From positions 1 through 39,295 of the forward strand of contig RQSC01001082.1 in assembly GCA_013416795.1 (NCBI GenBank): a DNA stretch of 39,295 bases. The letters run 5' to 3'. Position numbers and translations under genes: made by a program. This stretch comes from Prasinococcaceae sp. CCMP 1430 (Eukaryota; Plantae; Prasinodermophyta). The first letter of the stretch is position 1. Each line of letters starts with the position of its first letter. Under the pieces are notes generated by a model. It was not told the DNA's origin. It did not search any database and saw only the letters and a program-made list of their open reading frames with translations. Shown piece after piece: positions 1 through 6,838 of this stretch.

Positions 1-551
1 CATCGCGCCGGGGGGGGGGGGCCCAGGCCGCGGCCGGCGGCGCCCCTAGGCGCGCGCGCGCGCGTTTTCGCATGTGTTTCGCACATCATTTCGGCGCTGG
101 ACCTTCGCCATTTTTCGCAGCGCGGCGCGCGGCCGGCGCCGTTGCGAGGGGCGGAATGCTAGGAGGCCGGCCAGAGCTCTGCCTGTTCACGTCGCGAGCA
201 CGCGTTCTCTTCTTCTCTCTTCTGTCCGCGACCGCCCGCGGGAAGGCGGGCAAGAAAGAACGCGCGCGCAGCACGCCTACGCGTAGGCTACGCCTGGCCA
301 AGCTCAGGCAAGCCCACGCGCACGCGCACGTCCCCGATGGAGTCTCCCGTGGGTAGTAGCGACATGAAATAAAACATGACTTACGACATCCTTCCTTCAC
401 ACACTCCCCTCTGGCCTCGGCTCTCCCTTTCGTCGCTAGCCGCTCTCGCGAGCTCTAATACCCCCCCTCCCCCCCGCGCGCGCGCGTGCGTAAGCGACTG
501 ACGTAGGCGCGCCCCCAGAAAGTCATTCTGACGCCCTCTCTCATCAGCAGC

Positions 552-578
552 TAGAGAGAGAGCGAGAGAGAGAGAGGG
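552..578. repeat. Imperfect (GA)n microsatellite downstream of the kinase-isomerase stop
   Basis: tagagagagagcgagagagagagaggg. Confidence 0.8.
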
Positions 579-612
579 ACAGTCATTAGTGTTATTACTC
601 GTGAGACGAACG

Positions 613-3256
613 TCAGCGCGCCGCCGCGTCTGCGAGCGCGTCTCGCGCAGCGGCGATCGCCGCAAGCCCGTCGCGGGCGCGCAACGCCTCCTCGGCGACC
701 CCGCTCGCGGCCATGGCTGCCGCGGCTGCCCACAGCTCCCCGACGACCCGCACGTTGTGCTCCGCTTCGGCGACAGGATCCTCGCGCAGCGGGAAGGTAT
801 CGAAGTAGAGGTGCTCGCGCTCGCCCCGACCGTAGCCCGCGCGCTGCAGCCAGAAGAGGAGCTCCAGCGCTGCCTGCGGGTGCGCAGACGCAAACGCGAG
901 GCCATCCTCGGCGCCCAGGCGGACCGGCGCGTCATTGAGCTGCACGCCAAACAGCGCACGCGCTCCGTGTGCTAGCGCGGCCGACTGTGCGGGGTTCTCG
1001 CCCGCCATGAGCAGGTGGCCGAAGTCGAGCGTCAGCCCGAAGTTGGGCCTGCCGACGCGCCGCACGAGCTCCACGGCGGCGCCCGTGCTCGGCACGAGCG
1101 CGAAGCGGCTCTTCTCATCGGTGGGCTTGAACTCGAGCGACACGCGCACGCGCGGGCCGCACGCGTCGGCAACCGCGCCGTACGCCTCCGCCGCCGCGTC
1201 GAGCGCCGCCGCATAGTCAACCTGCAAATTGTAGTCGTAGCCGTCGAACTGCGGCCAGACCACCAGCTGCGATGCGTTGAGCGCGTGCACCCAGCCGCAC
1301 GCCTCGGCTGCGAGCCGCACGGCGGACGCGCGCACGTCGGCCGATGCGGCGGTGAGCGCGCCGGCGCTGAATGCGCTCTCGGGGAAGCGCATTGCGACAC
1401 CACCCGCGCGGAGCCCCGCAGCACGCAGCGCCGCGAGCACCTCTGCCGCCGCGAGCCCCTCCAGGTGCTGCGGGTAGTTGAGCTCCACCAGCGATAGCCC
1501 CGCCACGCTGGCCTGCCGCGCGATTAAACCAAGCACGCTGCTCAGCGGTTCGGCCCCGCGCCAGAGCTCCGGCCGCGCCCTCATCGAGTTGAGGCGAGAC
1601 GCGAGAAGCGGCAGCGGCGGCGCCGCCGAAGGCGACGGTGAGGGCCACAGCTCGACGTCCGCATCGCTAGGGCCGTCGACACGCTCCTGCTTCTCGTCTG
1701 CGGCGGCACTGTCTGCGCACTCCTCCCACTCCACGGCGGGGGCGGTGTCGGTCGCGCCACCCGCACCGGCGACGGCCAACCCTGCGAGCGCGTAGCACTC
1801 CTCTCGCCGCGGCAGGCTGGGCATCGCTCCGCGCCGCGCCACTGCAATCGCACCTGCGGCTGCGCCGAGGCGCAGCGCGTCGCGGTGCGGGCGGCCCTCA
1901 GCGAGCGCCACGCCAAAGGCGGCGCGAAACGCGTCGCCCGCAGCGGTCGCGTCGACGGCAGCGCCACCACCAGGAGGCCGCAGCGCAGGCTGATGCAGCA
2001 CCACCTCCTCCTTCCCTTCAACCTCTACGCCGCCATGCACCAGGAGCGCGCCTCGATCGCCAAGGGTGACCAGCACAGCGGCGGCGCCCTGTGCGCGCAG
2101 CGCGCGCGCCGCTGCGAGCGCCTCATCTGCAGTCGCTGTTGGCATGCCGTCGGTGAGCCGCGAGAGCTCGCCCTCGTTGGGTGCGACGTAGTCGACGAGC
2201 GAGAGCAGCGTGGGCCCCAGCGCGCGGTCCTCGCCGCCCGCGTCCAGGAGCACCACCGCGCGCTGGTGGAGAGAATCGGCACGGCGAGCCATTCGTTAGC
2301 ACTCGGCACTCCTCCTGTCGCACTCCCATGACGAGGGCACCCCGACAGCCGCGCGTACGCGCCTCTCGCACCTTCCCAGCACGCCGGACACGCTCCTTCA
2401 CAGCAGCCGCGACGATCTCGTTGACGAATTCGGGAATCTCGCGCTGCAGCAGAACGACTGCGCCTGCGCCTGCTATGGCGGCCTCATCGACAGCGTCCGC
2501 GGCGGCCACGCCTGCGGCCTCGGCCTCACTCGCCGTCCACGCCGCGTTGGCCCCGCCGACCACGACGCTCGTCGCCGCGCCATCAGGTTCGAGAAGCACG
2601 TAGCCCTGTCCCGAGCCGACGCCGTTGCCGTCGTGGACGGACCGCCGCAAGTCCACGCCTTCAGCCGTGAGTTTCTCGCGCAGCCATGGCGCGTGCGTAT
2701 CGGAGCCGAAGCGCCCGCAGAACCGCGCGCGCGCGCCCAGCCGTGCTGCGGCCGCCGCCTGGTTGGCTCCCTTGCCGCCGACGGCGAGCGATACCCCGGC
2801 ACCACCATTGCCACCGCTCGAGCCATCGCTTGCCAGCAGCGTCTCCTCCCGCGCCGGGAGGCGCGGCACGGGCACCGTTATGTCGACATTCACCGACCCG
2901 ACCACGTGTACATGGGGCGCGAGCGCGCCAGCGGCGCAAGCGGCCGCGAGGAGCAGCGCGAGCGCGCAGCCGAGCGCGGGCGCGAGTGGGGGGGCGCCGC
3001 TGGTGCAAGCGTGCAGCGCTCCGAAGAAACGCCGGCATCGCGCGCGCCCCCGCGCCGCGGTCGCCGAGGGTGCCGTGCGCGCGCACTGTGACCCCTTCCC
3101 CCATGCTGCTCGTACCGGCACAAGTTCCGGCTGGCTGTTGATAGGATTTCGGGCTCGCCACAGCACACGCACGTGGCGGCGGTGCGCGCGCCCCGTGAGC
3201 GCGCGCGCGAGTTGCATCTGCGTGCGCGTGCGCACACACAGTTGGCGCGCACACAT
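613..3256 (-). CDS. Fusion of a ribokinase-like PfkB sugar kinase (N-terminal) and a xylose-isomerase-family TIM-barrel sugar isomerase (C-terminal). Two exons, intron 2263-2371. Start uncertain: in-frame ATGs at 3256 and 3217, or out-of-frame ATG at 3038.
   Basis: PfkB motifs VVGSVNVD, GGKGANQAAAAARLG, PNEGEL, VTLGDRGA and DATAAGDAF. Isomerase motifs WPQFDGYDY, LEFKP, LDFGH, QLND, EDGL and YFDTFP. The intron AAG|GTGCGA...GCTAAC...CCACCAG|CGC joins the two ORFs in phase 0. Stop TGA at 615-613. Confidence 0.9.
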
Positions 3257-3365
3257 CGCCAACTTCTACAGCACGCACGCGCACGCTCGCGGACAAGGAG
3301 GGGGAGGTGAGGGGGTGGGTGAGGTGGGGCAAGAGGGAGACCTCGGAGCTCTCGCCGGAAGCACC

Positions 3366-4206
3366 ATGGCTCTCGACCACGACAGCTGGCTCCTGCTGTA
3401 CGCCGCCCCCGGCTTGGGTGTGGTGACCTCCAACGCGACGTTCGTCTCTCCGCTCGCGCACGTGCGGCGCGCGCGCGCGAGCGGCGACTTCTCGTCGATC
3501 AACGCCGCGCCATTCGCCGCCATCGTGGCCAACTGCATGGGGTGGTGCGCGTACGCGTTCGGCACGCGCGACTGGTTCGTGTTCTGGTCTAACGCGCCCG
3601 GCGTGCTGCTGGGGCTCTTCTTTGTGTCAAGTGCGATGCAACACACAAAATGCTCGTCGCTGCTCGCGCGCTTGGAGAGGCAGCTCCTCGTGCAGACGGC
3701 GGTGACACTCGTGGGCGGTGCGGTGGCGGCGATCGCGCTCCGCGATGCGGACCGAGCTATGAGCGTTCTCGGCGCAGTCGCCGTGTTCCACCTCCTCGTC
3801 TTCTACTCGGCGCCACTCTCCGATGTCGTGAATATACTGAAGCAGCGCGACTCTTCCAGCCTCCTCTGGCCGCTCATCGCGACCTCGGCCGTCAACGGAT
3901 TACTGTGGGTGAGTGCGCCACGCTTTGAGTGGCGTGCGTGCGTATGCCGGTGCTTGTCTGTGCAGTCTCCGCTGACATGCACGTGCGCGCGCGCAGGTGG
4001 GGTATGGGCTCGCACTGTCTGACTTCTTCATTGCTGGGCCCAACGCTTTTGGCGTCCTGCTGGCAGTGTTCCAGGCGGCGCTCAAGCTGCGCCTCCCGAG
4101 CAGGCCGGCGCGGGCCCTCCCGCGCTCCGCCTCGCAGGAGCCGCTGCAAGTCGTGGCAAACGAGGCGGCCAATGCCTCGGCTTCTTCTCCCGCCTGGCCT
4201 CAGTGA
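3366..4206 (+). CDS. SWEET: SWEET (MtN3/saliva) sugar transporter; exons 3366-3908 and 3997-4206
   Basis: accATGG start. MtN3 repeat motifs FVSPLAHVRR...PFAAIVANCMGWCAY...N and FYSAPLSDVVNILKQRDSSSL...NGLLW|VGYGLALSDFFIAGPNAFG. Phase-0 intron GTGAGT...GCTGAC...GCAG. Confidence 0.92.
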
Positions 4207-4473: not shown

Positions 4474-6462
4474 TCAGAGGGAGAACCCAGGCGCCGCGAC
4501 CATCCAGTTGGACGCCGCGCGCGGGCGCTGCTGCTGCCGGGGTTGCTGCTGCGCGGGCGGCCACATCTCGTGCGTGTACATGTCGAGTAGCCCGCCCGAG
4601 GCCGAGCCCGCACCCGCAGCGGCGGGTGGCCTCGGGATGGCCACCGCGCTCGACGTGTGCGAGGCGCCGGCAGTCATCGAGTGCGCGTCAAGAAACTCTT
4701 GCATCCCCACCGCGGGGCTCCGCGATGTCCCAGCTCCCTCGATGCTCGCGGGGTTGTCAAAGAACAGACTGGGCGTCCCGCCCCTCCTTGCGGCGCTTGT
4801 CGAGCGCCGCAGGCTGTGCTCGTAGAGTCCGTCGTAATTCTGCTTCCTCGCGCGCACGGAGAGCAAGAGCCCCACGCCGAGAACCACCACTGCACCTGCA
4901 ATGCCACCGGCGATCCCCGCCATCTCGTTCGCGCTCAGGCCCGCGTCCTTCGTGGCCGGGGGGGAGGGGGCGCCTGAAGGCGTGAGCGACAGGCTCGGAG
5001 GGGGTGACGACGGCGGGCTCGGGGGCCGTAACAGCGTCGGTGGCGGGCTCGGGTTTATGTCGACGACCTCGAGGTCGTCGAATATGGGCTCTCCGTCCTC
5101 TCCGACGCCTGAAACCTCCGCCTGGCTAATGATGGCTTCCACCTCCACCCCGGCCGCTTTCCCTGCCTCCTCAAATGCTTGACTAATGGCGTCGGCGTTT
5201 GTAACCGAGGTGCTCACGAAGTCGGTGATGATGTCCACCTCGATGGTCGGCGCCTGCAACACCTCAGCCTCGGCGCCCACCGCTGCAGCCACCGCTGCCG
5301 CATCCGCTGCCGAGTTGGCAACGATGGCTGCTGCTTTGTCGGCCTGGTCTTCTGGGAGCGTCGTCGTGAACTCCACGTCGACACCTTCGCCTTGCAGCAG
5401 GGCGCGTGAGCGCGAGCGCGAGCGCGCGCGCTGGCCGGCCGAGTCGTCGCCCGAAGTGAACGCGAGCTTCGCTTCGACGGACGCCTCGTCGATGCCCTTG
5501 ATCTGCGCGTAGCGGGCCGCCAGATCGGCCGCAGAGACGCCTAAGATCGCCTCTCCGGTGAGTCGCCAGACCTCGCGGATGATGATTGTGACCAGCACAC
5601 TCGTCGAGTCAGGTGACAGGCCCAGTTTGTCGAAGAAACCCTGCATGACATCTGCCACGATGCTGTCGATGGTGCTGACGTCTGCCAGATCGATCTGCAG
5701 GCTCGACTGCACCCGCGTGAGCGTCAGCGGCGGTGGCGGTGGCAGTGACGCCGAGAGTGCCGGAGACGTCGGAGGTGCCGGGGGCGGGCTAGCCTGCAGC
5801 GTGACACATTCACGCGAGTCTCTGTCCCACTCGCAGTGCACGAGCTCAATGCACTGCGCCTTCTTCTGCGCGGACGTGCAGGGCGCCGAGCCGTCGCTCT
5901 CGCCGCCGCTGTCCTCTTCCTTGTTCACTTTCTTCTTCATCTTCTTCGTGTGTTTCTTCGAGGAGCTAGGGGTGGCAGCGTATTCCTCGCCATCGTAGGA
6001 TGTGGAGGTGGCTGCGTATTCCTCAGCATCGTAGGAGGTAGGAGCGGCTGCGTATTCCTCACCGTAGTCGCCACCGTAGCCCATCCGAGGAGTCGTGACC
6101 CCGTAGCCTCCGCGCATGCCCCCATCCTCGGTCGGTGACTCCCCAGGCGGTCGCGTCACAGGTGGCGGTGGTGTCTCGGAAGGCGGCGATGCCGGAGGCG
6201 GTACTGACGGCGAACTCGGTGGAGACGAGGCGACCTTGGATGCGCACGGTCCCTCAAAGACGACCCAGAGGTCGTCCGAGGCGTGGCCGTAGCCGTAGCC
6301 GTAGCCGTAGCCGTAGTTGCCGACTTCACCGTAGCCATAGCCGTAGCCATAGCACTGCGCAGCTGTTGGCGCGACGGCCTGAACCTTGAGCTCAGCAGCG
6401 GCGCCTGTAACGGCCACGGCTACAGCGCCTGCCACGGCGCAGAGCGCACGCGTTGAGACCAT
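4474..6462 (-). CDS. Predicted type I membrane/cell-surface protein: signal peptide, Tyr-Gly repeats, Pro-rich segments, EEYAA repeats, short Cys module, one C-terminal TM helix
   Basis: Uninterrupted ORF. N-terminus MVSTRALCAVAGAVAVAVTGAAA is signal-like. TM segment GIAGGIAGAVVVLGVGLLLSV is followed by RARK. No recognised family. Confidence 0.7.
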   Translation of the reverse strand: MVSTRALCAVAGAVAVAVTGAAAELKVQAVAPTAAQCYGYGYGYGEVGNYGYGYGYGYGHASDDLWVVFEGPCASKVASSPPSSPSVPPPASPPSETPPPPVTRPPGESPTEDGGMRGGYGVTTPRMGYGGDYGEEYAAAPTSYDAEEYAATSTSYDGEEYAATPSSSKKHTKKMKKKVNKEEDSGGESDGSAPCTSAQKKAQCIELVHCEWDRDSRECVTLQASPPPAPPTSPALSASLPPPPPLTLTRVQSSLQIDLADVSTIDSIVADVMQGFFDKLGLSPDSTSVLVTIIIREVWRLTGEAILGVSAADLAARYAQIKGIDEASVEAKLAFTSGDDSAGQRARSRSRSRALLQGEGVDVEFTTTLPEDQADKAAAIVANSAADAAAVAAAVGAEAEVLQAPTIEVDIITDFVSTSVTNADAISQAFEEAGKAAGVEVEAIISQAEVSGVGEDGEPIFDDLEVVDINPSPPPTLLRPPSPPSSPPPSLSLTPSGAPSPPATKDAGLSANEMAGIAGGIAGAVVVLGVGLLLSVRARKQNYDGLYEHSLRRSTSAARRGGTPSLFFDNPASIEGAGTSRSPAVGMQEFLDAHSMTAGASHTSSAVAIPRPPAAAGAGSASGGLLDMYTHEMWPPAQQQPRQQQRPRAASNWMVAAPGFSL
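5965..6066 (-). repeat. Three in-frame 36-bp (12-aa) tandem repeats, EEYAA(A/T)xTSYDx
   Basis: TATTCCTC recurs on the + strand at 5981, 6017 and 6053 (period 36). Confidence 0.9.
6286..6352 (-). repeat. Hexamer microsatellite encoding (Tyr-Gly)n in two blocks
   Basis: (GCCGTA)n and (GCCATA) units on the + strand; translates as YGYGYGYG-EVGN-YGYGYGYGYG. Confidence 0.95.
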
Positions 6463-6838
6463 AGCGAGCCGCTCCCGCGCCGCCCGCGCCTCTGCGCGCA
6501 CCTGACCGCCCGCGCCTCTGCGCGCGGCGCCCGCGGGCGCGAGCGCACGCCGCCGCACTCGCTCCCTTCCCCCCCGCGTCTCTTCTCAGTCCCATCGCCC
6601 CCCCTCCCTGCCCCCATCCCCCACTCCACCCACGCACCCACCCACCCACCCACCCACCTGCCGCGCTGCGCACCGGCCGACCGCGGGCGCGAATTCGATC
6701 TGCGGCGCTCCCCTCAGCCGCTGGGCTTCCTCATCCGCCGCACCGCACCGCGCCGTTCCCCGAGCGCATACGGAAACGCATGCGGCACGGGCCGCGCGAC
6801 ACCTAGGGCGCCCGTGGGTACGTTACACATTCACATAC

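What the first reader, a model, noticed from the sequence alone, without database searches (positions are those of the whole stretch)
613..2920. Single polypeptide fusing a ribokinase-like kinase to a bacterial-type xylose-isomerase-family enzyme
Seen: after one intron is removed, a complete PfkB domain with its catalytic GD(AF) Asp continues through an acidic linker, without a stop, into a complete TIM barrel (ASRLNS, ELNYPQH, WPQFDGYDYNLQVDY, LEFKP, LDFGH, QLND, EDGL, YFDTFP). Established: these E-x-K-P, D-x-x-H, N-D and D-D/E motifs are the two-metal ligands of the xylose/rhamnose isomerase superfamily. Inference from memory, not a search: the barrel resembles the proteobacterial subgroup that includes D-apiose isomerase ApsI more than plant XylA, suggesting bacterial origin and a two-step isomerise/phosphorylate salvage enzyme for a pentose or branched sugar. 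I know of no characterised enzyme with this architecture.
Basis: partly seen in the sequence, partly recalled or inferred. Interest (0 to 1): 0.78.

Follow-up and report, generated by a model that had tools for sequence, protein, structure and literature searches.

The report
Algal sugar kinase–isomerase fusion protein
This marine alga makes one expressed protein that joins a modified ribokinase to a xylose-isomerase-like barrel; the fusion is common and already annotated in algae, the same two enzymes are always neighbours in bacteria, and the sugar they process together is unknown.

Summary
On the minus strand, a PfkB (ribokinase-family) domain split by one 109-nt intron (2263-2371) runs in frame through an acidic linker into a PF01261 TIM barrel. 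Transcript contigs from two studies skip exactly that intron and cross the domain junction.

The architecture is not new. More than 100 such fusions exist in green algae, dinoflagellates and pelagophytes, some named "ribokinase/xylose isomerase". I found no paper on them.

What I add:
- **Bacterial linkage.** Every bacterial relative of the barrel examined with readable flanking sequence has a PfkB kinase in its cluster, or a PTS instead (Lactiplantibacillus), plus a sugar transporter and usually a regulator (RpiR, DeoR or SorC).
- **Kinase origin.** The kinase domain belongs to the plant/algal ribokinase clade.
- **Kinase lid.** All 110 fusions carry a remodelled sugar lid (G98/V100/S or A110 instead of A/I/I). 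The published E. coli A98G mutation raises activity on D-arabinose.
- **Barrel.** It is closest to 3KTC, class I XylA and L-rhamnose isomerase. It lacks one XylA metal ligand and has family-specific arginines.

Best reading: a two-step salvage enzyme for a ribose-like but non-ribose sugar, probably kinase first and then isomerisation of the phosphosugar. The sugar is unknown. The apiose analogy and a simple bacterial origin are not supported. This scan noted the same stretch once before (s1-389884).

The parts
616..2262 (-). Coding exon 2 (549 codons; stop codon at 613-615): C-terminal half of the kinase, linker and whole barrel
   Evidence: Open frame 613..2292; Pfam PF00294 and PF01261; acceptor confirmed by RNA contigs
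2263..2371 (-). Intron, 109 nt, GT..AG, phase 0, CTAAC branch-like site
   Evidence: Sequence; skipped exactly in X1 record 4 and X2 record 9, retained in DNA run X8
2372..3038 (-). Coding exon 1, 5' limit uncertain: hydrophobic leader plus N-terminal half of the kinase. In the window, ATG 3038 is out of frame and the in-frame ATGs lie at 3217 and 3256
   Evidence: Pfam PF00294 profile 4-156; frames and ATGs; comparison with L089
1780..2914 (-). PfkB / ribokinase-family kinase domain, interrupted by the intron. Sites (E. coli RbsK equivalent): N14 at 2888-2890, D16 at 2882-2884, K43 at 2771-2773, lid G98 at 2603-2605, V100 at 2597-2599, S110 at 2567-2569, E143 at 2438-2440, NxxE at 2176-2178, catalytic Asp of AAGDAF at 1933-1935
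1618..1779 (-). Acidic interdomain linker, 54 residues, 12 Asp/Glu against 2 Lys/Arg
   Evidence: variable in length and sequence among homologues
616..1617 (-). Xylose-isomerase-like TIM barrel (PF01261). Sites: R9 at 1594-1596, H52 at 1465-1467, R78 at 1387-1389, W122 at 1255-1257, E163 at 1132-1134, K165 at 1126-1128, D199 at 1024-1026, H202 at 1015-1017, Q227 at 940-942, D230 at 931-933, E238/D239 at 904-909, D274 at 799-801
2915..2977 (-). N-terminal hydrophobic leader (ALGCALALLLAAACAAGALAP) directly ahead of the kinase domain; signal peptide or membrane anchor, not decided
   Evidence: Kyte-Doolittle mean 2.41 over 15 residues; similar leaders in most of the 15 homologues inspected
3003..3027 (-). 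Indel-variable GC-rich tract. The window is 16 nt longer than scaffold L089, and run X8 shows a net 16-nt gap here; this decides which ATG is in frame
3366..4206 (+). Head-to-head neighbour: SWEET/MtN3 sugar transporter gene with an 88-nt intron at 3908-3995. Listed as context, not shown to be part of the system
   Evidence: PF03083 at 2e-16; intron in X1 and X2 contigs; neighbourhood not conserved in three other algae

Best explanation
The gene encodes one bifunctional enzyme whose two domains carry out consecutive steps. Together they turn a free, ribose-like but non-ribose sugar into a sugar phosphate of central metabolism.

The N-terminal domain is a paralogue of the plant/algal ribokinase. 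It keeps all polar sugar- and ATP-site residues, but its hydrophobic lid is remodelled (Gly98/Val100/Ser110 in E. coli numbering, in place of Ala/Ile/Ile). It should therefore phosphorylate the terminal CH2OH of a furanose that carries a polar group where ribose has H-2/H-3.

The C-terminal domain is a metal-dependent aldose-ketose isomerase of the xylose/L-rhamnose isomerase superfamily. The order I think most likely is kinase first, with the barrel then isomerising the phosphorylated aldose to a ketose phosphate.

Leading candidate sugars:
- D-arabinose, going to arabinose-5-P and then ribulose-5-P.
- D-allose or D-allulose.

Shown: the fusion, its expression, the conserved kinase-barrel linkage, the lid change and the fold. 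Inferred: catalytic activity, the order of the steps and the sugar.
For: **Fusion and expression.**. The Chloropicon orthologue is a single intronless ORF. MMETSP transcripts encode complete fusions.

**Functional linkage.** 23 of 24 bacterial loci with 37-50% identical barrels have a PfkB gene directly downstream on the same strand; the 24th contig ends there. More distant barrels (31-38%) in Deinococcus, Sinorhizobium, Pantoea, Klebsiella, Rhizobium, Agrobacterium and Roseibium also sit in clusters with a PfkB kinase, an RpiR or DeoR regulator and an ABC or MFS sugar transporter. No further catabolic enzyme is conserved, so the product should enter central metabolism directly.

**Kinase.**
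- Best PDB match for both halves is the ribokinase 6ILR, which I take to be the Arabidopsis enzyme.
- It forms a 100/100 clade with plant ribokinase.
- N14, D16, G41, G42, K43, N46, E143, N187, E190 and D255 are all kept.
- 109 of 110 fusions have G98 (the other has a gap there), and none has I110 (S in 89, A in 19, C in 2). By contrast 82 of 95 PfkB-only proteins have A98 and I110.
- Every bacterial barrel-partner kinase examined also lacks I110. The second, RbsD-linked kinase in SAR324 and A. vitis keeps the canonical lid.
- PMC9604405: A98, I100 and I110 face H-2'/H-3' of ribose, and A98G raises kcat on D-arabinose 15-fold.

**Barrel.** AF2 mean pLDDT 89.9. Foldseek TM-scores: 3KTC 0.85, class I XylA 0.79, L-RhI 0.77-0.80. 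The equivalents of E181, K183, E217, H220, D255 and D287 are conserved.

**Kinase-first order.**
- A Lactiplantibacillus plasmid has the same barrel subfamily (23 of 26 signature positions kept) beside PTS EIIC/EIIA, with rpiB and rpe, and with no kinase.
- R9 and R78 are invariant. R78 replaces XylA L93 and the Glu of 3KTC.
- The domain order is kinase then barrel.

**Allose-like option.** The solute-binding proteins in three clusters match D-allose-binding proteins better than ribose-binding ones.
Against: - No activity was measured, and no ligand or docking test was possible.
- XylA-type enzymes are known to act on free sugars. A phosphosugar substrate would be new for this branch, and the role I give R78 rests on an alignment plus my memory of XylA structures.
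- One XylA metal-2 ligand (D257) is Gly, so the two-metal mechanism may be altered.
- NCBI's annotation names several partner kinases 'ribokinase', so plain ribose cannot be excluded as the substrate.
- The solute-binding-protein similarity points to allose or ribose, while the lid data point to arabinose, so the clues do not converge on one sugar.
- The Lactiplantibacillus barrel is only 31% identical to the window barrel.
- A conserved hydrophobic N-terminal leader is odd for an ATP-dependent enzyme if it is a secretion signal.
Confidence: 0.55

Rival explanations
1. Isomerase first. The barrel converts a free aldose to a ketose, or a ketopentose such as D-ribulose to D-ribose or D-arabinose. 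The kinase then phosphorylates that product, as in the classical xylose, arabinose, rhamnose and fucose routes.
For: The nearest solved relatives (XylA, L-RhI) all act on free sugars. RbsD/FucU-family genes (ribose pyranase / fucose mutarotase family) lie in or beside clusters in SAR324, A. vitis and R. binae. In bacteria the barrel gene precedes the kinase gene.
Against: In Lactiplantibacillus a PTS replaces the kinase beside the same barrel subfamily, so the sugar arrives already phosphorylated. Ribokinase-type enzymes phosphorylate the exocyclic CH2OH of a furanose, which a ketopentofuranose does not offer at C5 (established chemistry, my inference). Invariant R9 and R78 are absent from XylA and 3KTC.
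Confidence: 0.25
2. The kinase domain is simply the alga's housekeeping ribokinase. The barrel is an accessory or unrelated activity fused only for co-expression.
For: UniProt and several GenBank records call these proteins 'Ribokinase'. All polar ribose ligands are conserved. The domain forms a 100/100 clade with plant ribokinase.
Against: Stand-alone ribokinases with the canonical A/I/I lid exist in algae (for example P0231-P0233 and P0247), and with the plant enzymes they form their own 100/99 clade. All 110 fusions have the altered lid. Kinase-barrel linkage recurs across at least five bacterial phyla, where a separate canonical RbsK can sit in the same locus. A98G and I110V each lower the ribose activity of the E. 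coli enzyme.
Confidence: 0.12
3. The barrel is a ketose 3-epimerase type enzyme, for example D-allulose or its 6-phosphate to D-fructose or fructose-6-P. With the kinase this would give a complete two-enzyme allulose route.
For: PF01261 also holds the tagatose/psicose 3-epimerases. The first metal site here reads E-D-(H/Q)-D, close to the epimerases' E-D-H-E as I recall it. AlsB-like binding proteins and RpiR regulators sit in the clusters. Weak NCBIfam hits to FrlC and IolO epimerases appear for an actinobacterial member.
Against: Sequence and fold matches to XylA and L-RhI are far stronger than to any epimerase. The invariant E-x-K-P lysine (XylA K183) is an isomerase hallmark. The same E-D-H-D pattern occurs in L-rhamnose isomerase (from memory).
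Confidence: 0.08
4. A D-apiose salvage enzyme: an ApsI-like isomerase plus a kinase.
For: The nearest solved structure, 3KTC, is from Pectobacterium, a genus with a described apsI cluster (PMC13001218).
Against: The apiose-route kinase aplK is an FGGY kinase and works with transketolase subunits. None of the barrel clusters examined has either; all have PfkB or a PTS. The PfkB-partnered enterobacterial barrels give only 176-185 bits against 3KTC (about 40% identity by my reading of the alignment), and 3KTC lacks R78 and H52. Whether 3KTC is ApsI was not verifiable here.
Confidence: 0.04

Closest known systems
PDB 3KTC, 'putative sugar isomerase' of Pectobacterium atrosepticum SCRI1043 (structural-genomics entry)
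   Same: Best sequence match (1.7e-32) and best fold match (TM 0.85, 30% identity). It has a similar length (about 330 aa) and shares the WP..DG.DY, E.KP, LDFGH, ND and FD.FP motifs.
   Different: It is a stand-alone protein. It has Glu where this family has the invariant R78, no counterpart of N48/H52, and DDD where this family has (E/D)-D-G. Its function was not established in any source I could read.
Class I D-xylose isomerase (Streptomyces, Arthrobacter, Actinoplanes XylA)
   Same: (beta/alpha)8 fold with the C-terminal helical tail, TM 0.79. The equivalents of E181, K183, H220, D287 and W137 are conserved, and E217 and D255 are kept as acidic residues.
   Different: Identity is 25-27%. 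D245 is Gln/His and D257 is Gly. R9 and R78 are added. The score is 68.8 bits against a cut-off of 447 for TIGR02631. It is fused to a kinase.
Pseudomonas stutzeri L-rhamnose isomerase (broad-range aldose-ketose isomerase)
   Same: Fold match TM 0.77-0.80. The first-site ligand pattern E-D-H-D is like that of this family (from memory of the L-RhI structures).
   Different: Identity is 17-18%, the enzyme is larger (about 430 aa), and its partner kinase in rhamnose pathways is FGGY, not PfkB.
Plant plastid ribokinase (PDB 6ILR, which I take to be Arabidopsis RBSK) and E. coli RbsK
   Same: 6ILR is the best PDB match of both kinase halves (78 and 93 bits). The domain shares a clade with plant ribokinase and has identical polar sugar, NxxE and GAGD motifs.
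   Different: The lid residues are G/V/S instead of A/V(I)/I. It has a hydrophobic leader, where plant RBSK is said to carry a plastid transit peptide (from memory). It is fused to the barrel.
E. coli D-allose system (AlsB, AlsR/RpiR, AlsK, RpiB, AlsE)
   Same: The bacterial barrel clusters have AlsB-like binding proteins and RpiR-family regulators. The Lactiplantibacillus cluster has rpiB and rpe homologues.
   Different: The kinase (ROK family) and the isomerase (RpiB) belong to other protein families, and no TIM barrel is involved (als composition from memory).
frl operon pair FrlC (PF01261 epimerase) and FrlD (PfkB kinase)
   Same: The same two Pfam families are linked in one catabolic operon (established knowledge). 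There is a weak NCBIfam hit to FrlC.
   Different: FrlC is an epimerase of the single-metal branch. The substrates are Amadori compounds, a deglycase is required, and it is not fused.

Membership tests
PfkB carbohydrate kinase family (PF00294) | Profile match above Pfam's gathering score | tested here: met
   62 bits (exon 1) and 89.8 bits (exon 2) against a cut-off of 25.8; together they cover profile positions 4-300 of 302
PfkB carbohydrate kinase family (PF00294) | GG dipeptide motif, NxxE motif and catalytic Asp in G-A/G-G-D | tested here: met
   GGKGANQ, PNEGE and AAGDAF are present and aligned with E. coli G41-G42-K43, N187/E190 and D255
Ribokinase proper (EC 2.7.1.15) | Polar ribose ligands N14, D16, K43, N46, E143 | tested here: met
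   All conserved in the window and in 8 other fusions
Ribokinase proper (EC 2.7.1.15) | Hydrophobic lid A98/I100/I110 that packs on H-2'/H-3' of ribose (PMC9604405) | tested here: not met
   The window has G/V/S. Of 110 fusions, none has I110, whereas 82 of 95 PfkB-only proteins have A98 and I110
Ribokinase proper (EC 2.7.1.15) | Score above the NCBIfam equivalog cut-off (TIGR02152, 299.65 bits) | tested here: inconclusive
   Fusion kinase domains score 196-244 bits, but a plant ribokinase also falls below the cut-off (258). Bacterial partner kinases score 189-247, against 312-381 for canonical bacterial ribokinases
Xylose isomerase-like TIM barrel (PF01261) | Profile match above the gathering score, and a (beta/alpha)8 fold | tested here: met
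   70.6 bits against 31.1; AF2 mean pLDDT 89.9; top Foldseek hits are all XylA, RhaI and 3KTC
D-xylose isomerase (XylA, EC 5.3.1.5) | Full set of two-metal ligands E181, E217, H220, D245, D255, D257, D287, plus K183 | tested here: not met
   E163, D199, H202, E238, D274 and K165 correspond, but D245 is Gln/His and D257 is an invariant Gly
D-xylose isomerase (XylA, EC 5.3.1.5) | Score above the equivalog cut-offs (TIGR02631 at 447, TIGR02630 at 533) | tested here: not met
   68.8 and 20.3 bits
D-apiose isomerase ApsI / apiose transketolase pathway | Clustered with the FGGY apulose kinase and the transketolase subunits AptA/AptB | tested here: not met
   The E. coli SE15 apiose cluster has an FGGY aplK and transketolases. 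None of the more than 30 barrel loci examined does
D-apiose isomerase ApsI / apiose transketolase pathway | Sequence orthology to a characterised ApsI | not testable with these tools
   No ApsI reference sequence or model was reachable. Carter et al. 2018 is not held, and no NCBIfam ApsI model was hit
Algal PfkB + PF01261 fusion family ('ribokinase/xylose isomerase' of GenBank) | Same domain order, full-length alignment and shared lid and barrel signatures | tested here: met
   40-59% identity over 51-98% of the query to the 119 listed hits from other sources, all PfkB + PF01261; alignment; lid G-V-S-V

The most novel reading that the evidence does not exclude
The fusion and its bacterial operon counterparts define an undescribed two-step route for a rare ribose-like sugar. 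A ribokinase paralogue with an opened, polar lid (or a PTS) phosphorylates the sugar. A xylose/rhamnose-isomerase-superfamily barrel then isomerises the phosphorylated aldose, for example D-arabinose-5-P to ribulose-5-P. That would be the first phosphosugar isomerase in this branch of the superfamily. The route would be shared by green algae, dinoflagellates, pelagophytes, SAR324, freshwater Actinomycetota, rhizobia, enterobacteria and lactobacilli.
Probability: 0.3. Interest if true: 0.7.

Novelty: new member of a known kind. Interest (0 to 1): 0.5.

Why it matters
The gene itself is one more member of a fusion family that the databases already hold, so the architecture is not a discovery. 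The family is, however, large, and as far as I could find it has not been characterised. It occurs in many marine and freshwater algae, and it has a strictly conserved two-gene counterpart in ecologically important bacteria: SAR324, freshwater Actinomycetota, and plant- and alga-associated rhizobia and enterics.

The current label 'ribokinase' is probably misleading. The fused kinase is a paralogue with a changed specificity lid, and canonical ribokinases exist alongside it. Working out the substrate would assign a function to hundreds of genes. It would add a sugar to the list of compounds exchanged between algae and bacteria. If the barrel works on a phosphosugar, it would also extend the chemistry known for the xylose-isomerase superfamily.

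Tried and rejected
- **Alternative splice donors** (after VAAA or after VKER). The second would restore the exact spacing seen in homologues, but RNA contigs of two runs use 2372|2262.
- **Apiose pair.** Rejected on kinase family and cluster content.
- **SWEET plus fusion as a conserved sugar mini-cluster.** The SWEET gene is real but is not next to the fusion in Micractinium, Chloropicon or Pelagophyceae CCMP2097.
- **Plant-type (class II) XylA or AP-endonuclease identity.** Very weak or no matches.
- **Sulfoquinovose route** (isomerase plus PfkB sulfofructose kinase). Considered from memory and dropped: no aldolase or reductase is conserved, and the kinase is ribokinase-like.
- **Barrel and kinase inherited together from a bacterial operon.** Rejected for the kinase: bacterial partner kinases are separate clades from the algal domain.
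- **tblastn with the Ala-rich kinase query.** It found nothing because of filtering, so I replaced it with an HMM search of ORFs.
- **Language-model atlas search.** Only generic 'TIM barrel' names came back.
- **Literature.** Ten searches found no paper on the fusion, on 3KTC, on PDB 8WL5, or on an allulose/psicose kinase. Carter et al. 2018 is not held.
- **E. coli homologue of the Klebsiella barrel.** None found.
- **Not used.** The large profile search and the second structure job, because no claim here rests on the absence of relatives.
Full report
**1. What is in the sequence**

The window is about 65-71% G+C. The gene lies on the minus strand. ORF 613..2292(-), 559 aa, contains by itself three parts:
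- the C-terminal half of a PfkB kinase domain (PF00294, 89.8 bits, profile positions 162-300);
- a 54-residue linker with 12 acidic and 2 basic residues;
- a complete PF01261 'xylose isomerase-like TIM barrel' (70.6 bits against a cut-off of 31.1).

The fusion therefore does not depend on any gene model. The N-terminal half of the kinase (profile positions 4-156, 62 bits) lies upstream in frame 2372..3262(-).

The two parts are joined by a 109-nt GT..AG intron, 2263-2371, in phase 0, with a CTAAC branch-like site.

**2. Expression and splicing**

Contigs of two small transcript-like runs from different studies join 2262 directly to 2372 (X1 record 4, X2 record 9). A DNA run of the same organism (X8 record 17) keeps the intron.

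X1 record 3 (1349-1907) and X2 record 8 (1608-1766) cross the kinase/linker/barrel junction without interruption. No listed RNA contig covers 1908-2012, which is inside the same ORF and the same domain. A marine metatranscriptome (X3) also holds near-identical pieces.

The spliced product has six more residues than its homologues at the junction. An alternative donor would remove them, but the RNA contigs do not use it.

**3. The 5' end is unsettled**

In the window the only in-frame ATGs are at 3256 and 3217. Either would give an extension of about 100-115 residues that homologues lack.

A Tara metagenome scaffold that is 98.5% identical (L089) has 16 nt fewer at about 3003-3027. That puts ATG 3038 and ATG 3104 in frame and gives the start MLARWRGSGAPPLAPALGCALALLLAAACAAGALAP followed by HVHVVGS. 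This is a 36-residue leader with a hydrophobic core. DNA run X8 shows a net 16-nt gap at the same place, but I did not see its sequence.

Most of the 15 homologues inspected have a similar short hydrophobic N-terminus directly ahead of the kinase domain. I ran no signal-peptide predictor. Whether this is a secretion signal, the first part of a plastid-targeting signal, or a membrane anchor is open.

**4. The architecture is common and already annotated**

A word-based search with the 559-aa ORF returned 344 hits. All 119 listed hits from other sources carry PF00294 plus PF01261 at 40-59% identity. They include:
- Micractinium, Chlorella, Tetradesmus and Chlamydomonas eustigma;
- Raphidocelis ('ribokinase xylose isomerase'), Scenedesmus and Monoraphidium;
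- Chloropicon primus and Nannochloris;
- the dinoflagellates Prorocentrum and Effrenium;
- Pelagophyceae CCMP2097;
- complete MMETSP transcripts.

UniProt calls several of them 'Ribokinase'. The Chloropicon gene is a single intronless ORF of 708 codons. None of my literature searches found a paper that describes the fusion.

I did not verify that.

**5. The kinase domain**

Both halves match the ribokinase of PDB 6ILR best (78 and 93 bits), ahead of bacterial ribokinases. I take 6ILR to be the Arabidopsis enzyme.

In a maximum-likelihood tree the fused kinase domains form a 100/100 clade with plant ribokinase. The PfkB genes that sit next to the barrel in bacteria form separate clades. A second PfkB in SAR324 loci, next to RbsD, groups with E. 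coli RbsK.

A second tree includes stand-alone algal ribokinases. All stand-alone eukaryotic enzymes plus the plant ones form one clade (100/99). The fused ones form an unresolved grade around it. They are paralogues, and which state is ancestral is unresolved.

All polar sugar and catalytic residues of E. coli RbsK are conserved: N14, D16, G41, G42, K43, N46, E143, N187, E190 and D255. The lid is not:

| Group | Position 98 | Position 110 |
|---|---|---|
| 110 fusions | G in 109, gap in 1 | S in 89, A in 19, C in 2; never I |
| 95 PfkB-only proteins | A in 82 | I in the same 82 |
| 11 further PfkB-only proteins | G | S (probably truncated fusions, given their signature and lengths) |

Every bacterial barrel-partner kinase examined also lacks I110 (S, T, A or G), while the co-resident canonical ribokinases keep A-I-I.

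A mutational study of the E. coli enzyme bears on this (PMC9604405). It shows that A98, I100 and I110 form the hydrophobic surface facing H-2' and H-3' of ribose. A98G lowers ribose activity and raises kcat on D-arabinose 15-fold. The natural G98/V100/S110 lid therefore argues for a substrate with a polar group on that face. It does not look like a housekeeping ribokinase.

The NCBIfam ribokinase cut-off is not decisive for eukaryotes. Fusion domains score 196-244 bits and a plant ribokinase 258, against a cut-off of 299.65. In bacteria it does separate partner kinases (189-247) from canonical ones (312-381).

**6. The barrel**

*Matches.*
- By sequence, the best solved relative is 3KTC, a 'putative sugar isomerase' of Pectobacterium atrosepticum (1.7e-32). 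Class I xylose isomerases follow at about 1e-15, and class II enzymes are marginal.
- An AlphaFold model built on a 14-sequence alignment has a mean pLDDT of 89.9.
- Foldseek gives TM-scores of 0.85 for 3KTC, about 0.79 for class I XylA and 0.77-0.80 for P. stutzeri L-rhamnose isomerase.

*Active site.* Residue numbers below count from the start of the barrel query, window:616-1620(-). The HMMER alignment to a Streptomyces XylA gives these correspondences:

| XylA residue | This family |
|---|---|
| E181 | E163 |
| K183 | K165 |
| E217 | D199 |
| H220 | H202 |
| D245 | Q227 (Gln or His in most relatives) |
| D255 | E238 (Glu or Asp) |
| D257 | G240 (invariant Gly) |
| D287 | D274 |
| W137 | W122 |

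One metal-2 ligand is therefore missing, and D230 and D239 are conserved nearby.

*Family-specific residues.* R9, N11, N48, R78, R97, D126, Q133, E208, E285 and N289 are invariant across the PfkB-partnered barrels compared. H52 and R97 are also kept in all of these, and change only in the PTS-linked Lactiplantibacillus barrel. R78 aligns with XylA L93, next to F94. It is Glu in 3KTC, which also lacks counterparts of N48 and H52.

**7. Bacterial relatives and their neighbourhoods**

*Close relatives.* A scan of one genome per species found full-length relatives at 46-50% identity in SAR324 and Trueperaceae. Relatives at 37-40% occur in Actinomycetota MAGs, one Bacteroidota-labelled MAG and Paraoceanicella. 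In 23 of 24 such loci a PfkB gene follows the barrel on the same strand, often overlapping it by 4 nt. The 24th contig ends there.

| Organism | Cluster content |
|---|---|
| Trueperaceae | RpiR, barrel, PfkB, CUT2 ABC transporter |
| Actinomycetota | SorC regulator, binding protein, permease, barrel, PfkB, ATPase |
| SAR324 | divergent TRAP transporter; barrel, PfkB, RbsD, canonical ribokinase, CUT1 ABC transporter |
| Paraoceanicella | CUT1 ABC transporter, barrel, PfkB |

*More distant relatives.* Barrels at 31-38% identity on plasmids show the same linkage. Deinococcus, Sinorhizobium, Pantoea, Rhizobium, Agrobacterium vitis and Roseibium (isolated from Symbiodiniaceae) all have a PfkB kinase, an RpiR or DeoR regulator and a CUT2 ABC transporter. 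Klebsiella has an MFS transporter instead.

No FGGY kinase, transketolase or aldolase is conserved. The product should therefore enter central metabolism directly.

*A PTS in place of the kinase.* On a Lactiplantibacillus plantarum plasmid, the same barrel subfamily (23 of 26 signature positions kept) sits beside PTS EIIC and EIIA genes. Divergent rpiB and rpe genes are present and there is no kinase. A PTS delivers its sugar already phosphorylated. This is my main reason to prefer 'phosphorylation first, isomerisation of the phosphosugar second'. The invariant arginines and the kinase-then-barrel domain order point the same way.

*Binding proteins.* Those of three clusters (Actinomycetota, S. 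meliloti, Deinococcus) match D-allose-binding proteins (139-158 bits) better than ribose-binding proteins (about 90-120 bits). The Trueperaceae binding protein matches nothing closely.

**8. Which sugar**

The evidence narrows the field but does not settle it.

- **D-arabinose.** It fits the lid data. It gives a complete two-step route through arabinose-5-P to ribulose-5-P. It also fits rpe and rpiB next to the PTS-linked barrel, and the RbsD/FucU-family genes.
- **D-allose or D-allulose.** These fit the AlsB-like binding proteins, the RpiR regulators and the L-RhI-like barrel. They would need a further epimerase that is not conserved in the clusters.
- **D-ribulose/D-ribose and branched sugars.** These remain possible.

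My rough odds are 60:40 for kinase-first over isomerase-first, and no more than 30% for any single sugar.

**9. Origin**

In the barrel tree, Trueperaceae, Actinomycetota and Paraoceanicella lie on one side (99/98). All algal sequences lie on the other, with the SAR324 clade (100/100) nested among dinoflagellate, diatom and pelagophyte sequences. The tree is unrooted.

It does not show a simple bacterium-to-alga transfer. It is equally compatible with an alga-to-SAR324 transfer. The SAR324 partner kinase nevertheless groups with the Trueperaceae one (97/91), not with the algal domain. The kinase half of the fusion is eukaryotic.

**10. The neighbour**

The head-to-head gene at 3366-4206(+) is a SWEET transporter (PF03083, 2e-16; its intron 3908-3995 is seen in RNA contigs). 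This was noted earlier in the scan (s1-389884). The pairing is not conserved in Micractinium, Chloropicon or Pelagophyceae CCMP2097, so I treat it as context only.

**11. Verdict**

The gene is a real, expressed member of a widespread, annotated but uncharacterised fusion family.

The useful new points are:
- the strict kinase-barrel linkage across bacteria;
- the diagnostic lid change, which argues against 'ribokinase' as the function;
- the hint that the barrel acts on a phosphosugar.

Noticed in passing
window 3003-3027 (minus-strand gene 5' region); L089:~900-1000: A 16-nt length difference in a GC-rich tract between the window and scaffold L089 decides whether ATG 3038/3104 or ATG 3217/3256 is in frame. 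DNA run X8 shows a net 16-nt gap at the same place. This is either a strain polymorphism or a local assembly error in the window.
   Followed up: partly
window 2915-2977 (-) and N-termini of P0003, P0005, P0011, P0015, P0036, P0061, P0063, P0031, P0097: A short, strongly hydrophobic N-terminal leader sits directly ahead of the kinase domain in most of the fusions inspected. If it is a secretion signal, that is odd for an ATP-dependent sugar kinase. It may instead be a membrane anchor, as in plant hexokinase (comparison from memory).
   Followed up: partly
window 3366-4206 (+): A SWEET/MtN3 transporter gene lies head-to-head with the fusion, about 100-330 bp away depending on the true start. 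Its 88-nt intron at 3908-3995 is confirmed by RNA contigs. The neighbourhood is not conserved in three other algae.
   Followed up: yes
L006, L009-L011, L013 (SAR324) against algal proteins; tree: SAR324 barrel sequences nest inside the algal barrel diversity, while their adjacent kinase groups with the Trueperaceae kinase. This may reflect an alga-to-bacterium transfer, or replacement of one gene of the pair.
   Followed up: partly
P0209 (Aureococcus anophagefferens), P0247 (Symbiodinium pilosum): Other architectures exist. Aureococcus has the barrel fused to ankyrin repeats instead of a kinase. A Symbiodinium stand-alone ribokinase with a canonical lid carries an acetyltransferase domain (PF00583).
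   Followed up: no
L095 (Agrobacterium vitis plasmid pRvVAR031a) 680-14544; L094 (Rhizobium binae): Large rhizobial loci combine two ABC systems (CUT1 with a binding protein of about 553 aa, and CUT2) with RbsD/FucU genes, the barrel, RpiR and the variant-lid kinase. The A. vitis locus also has a second RbsD/FucU gene and a canonical ribokinase. This suggests uptake of ribose plus a second related sugar, or of a compound that yields both.
   Followed up: partly
window 4474-6558 (-): A 694-aa ORF has GYGYGY repeats, long Pro/Ser-rich stretches and a C-terminal hydrophobic segment. It looks like a cell-surface glycoprotein.
   Followed up: no
window 548-590 and 10-21: An (AG)n-rich tract lies just downstream of the fusion gene's stop codon, and a run of 12 G sits at the window start. 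Both are low-complexity sequence.
   Followed up: no
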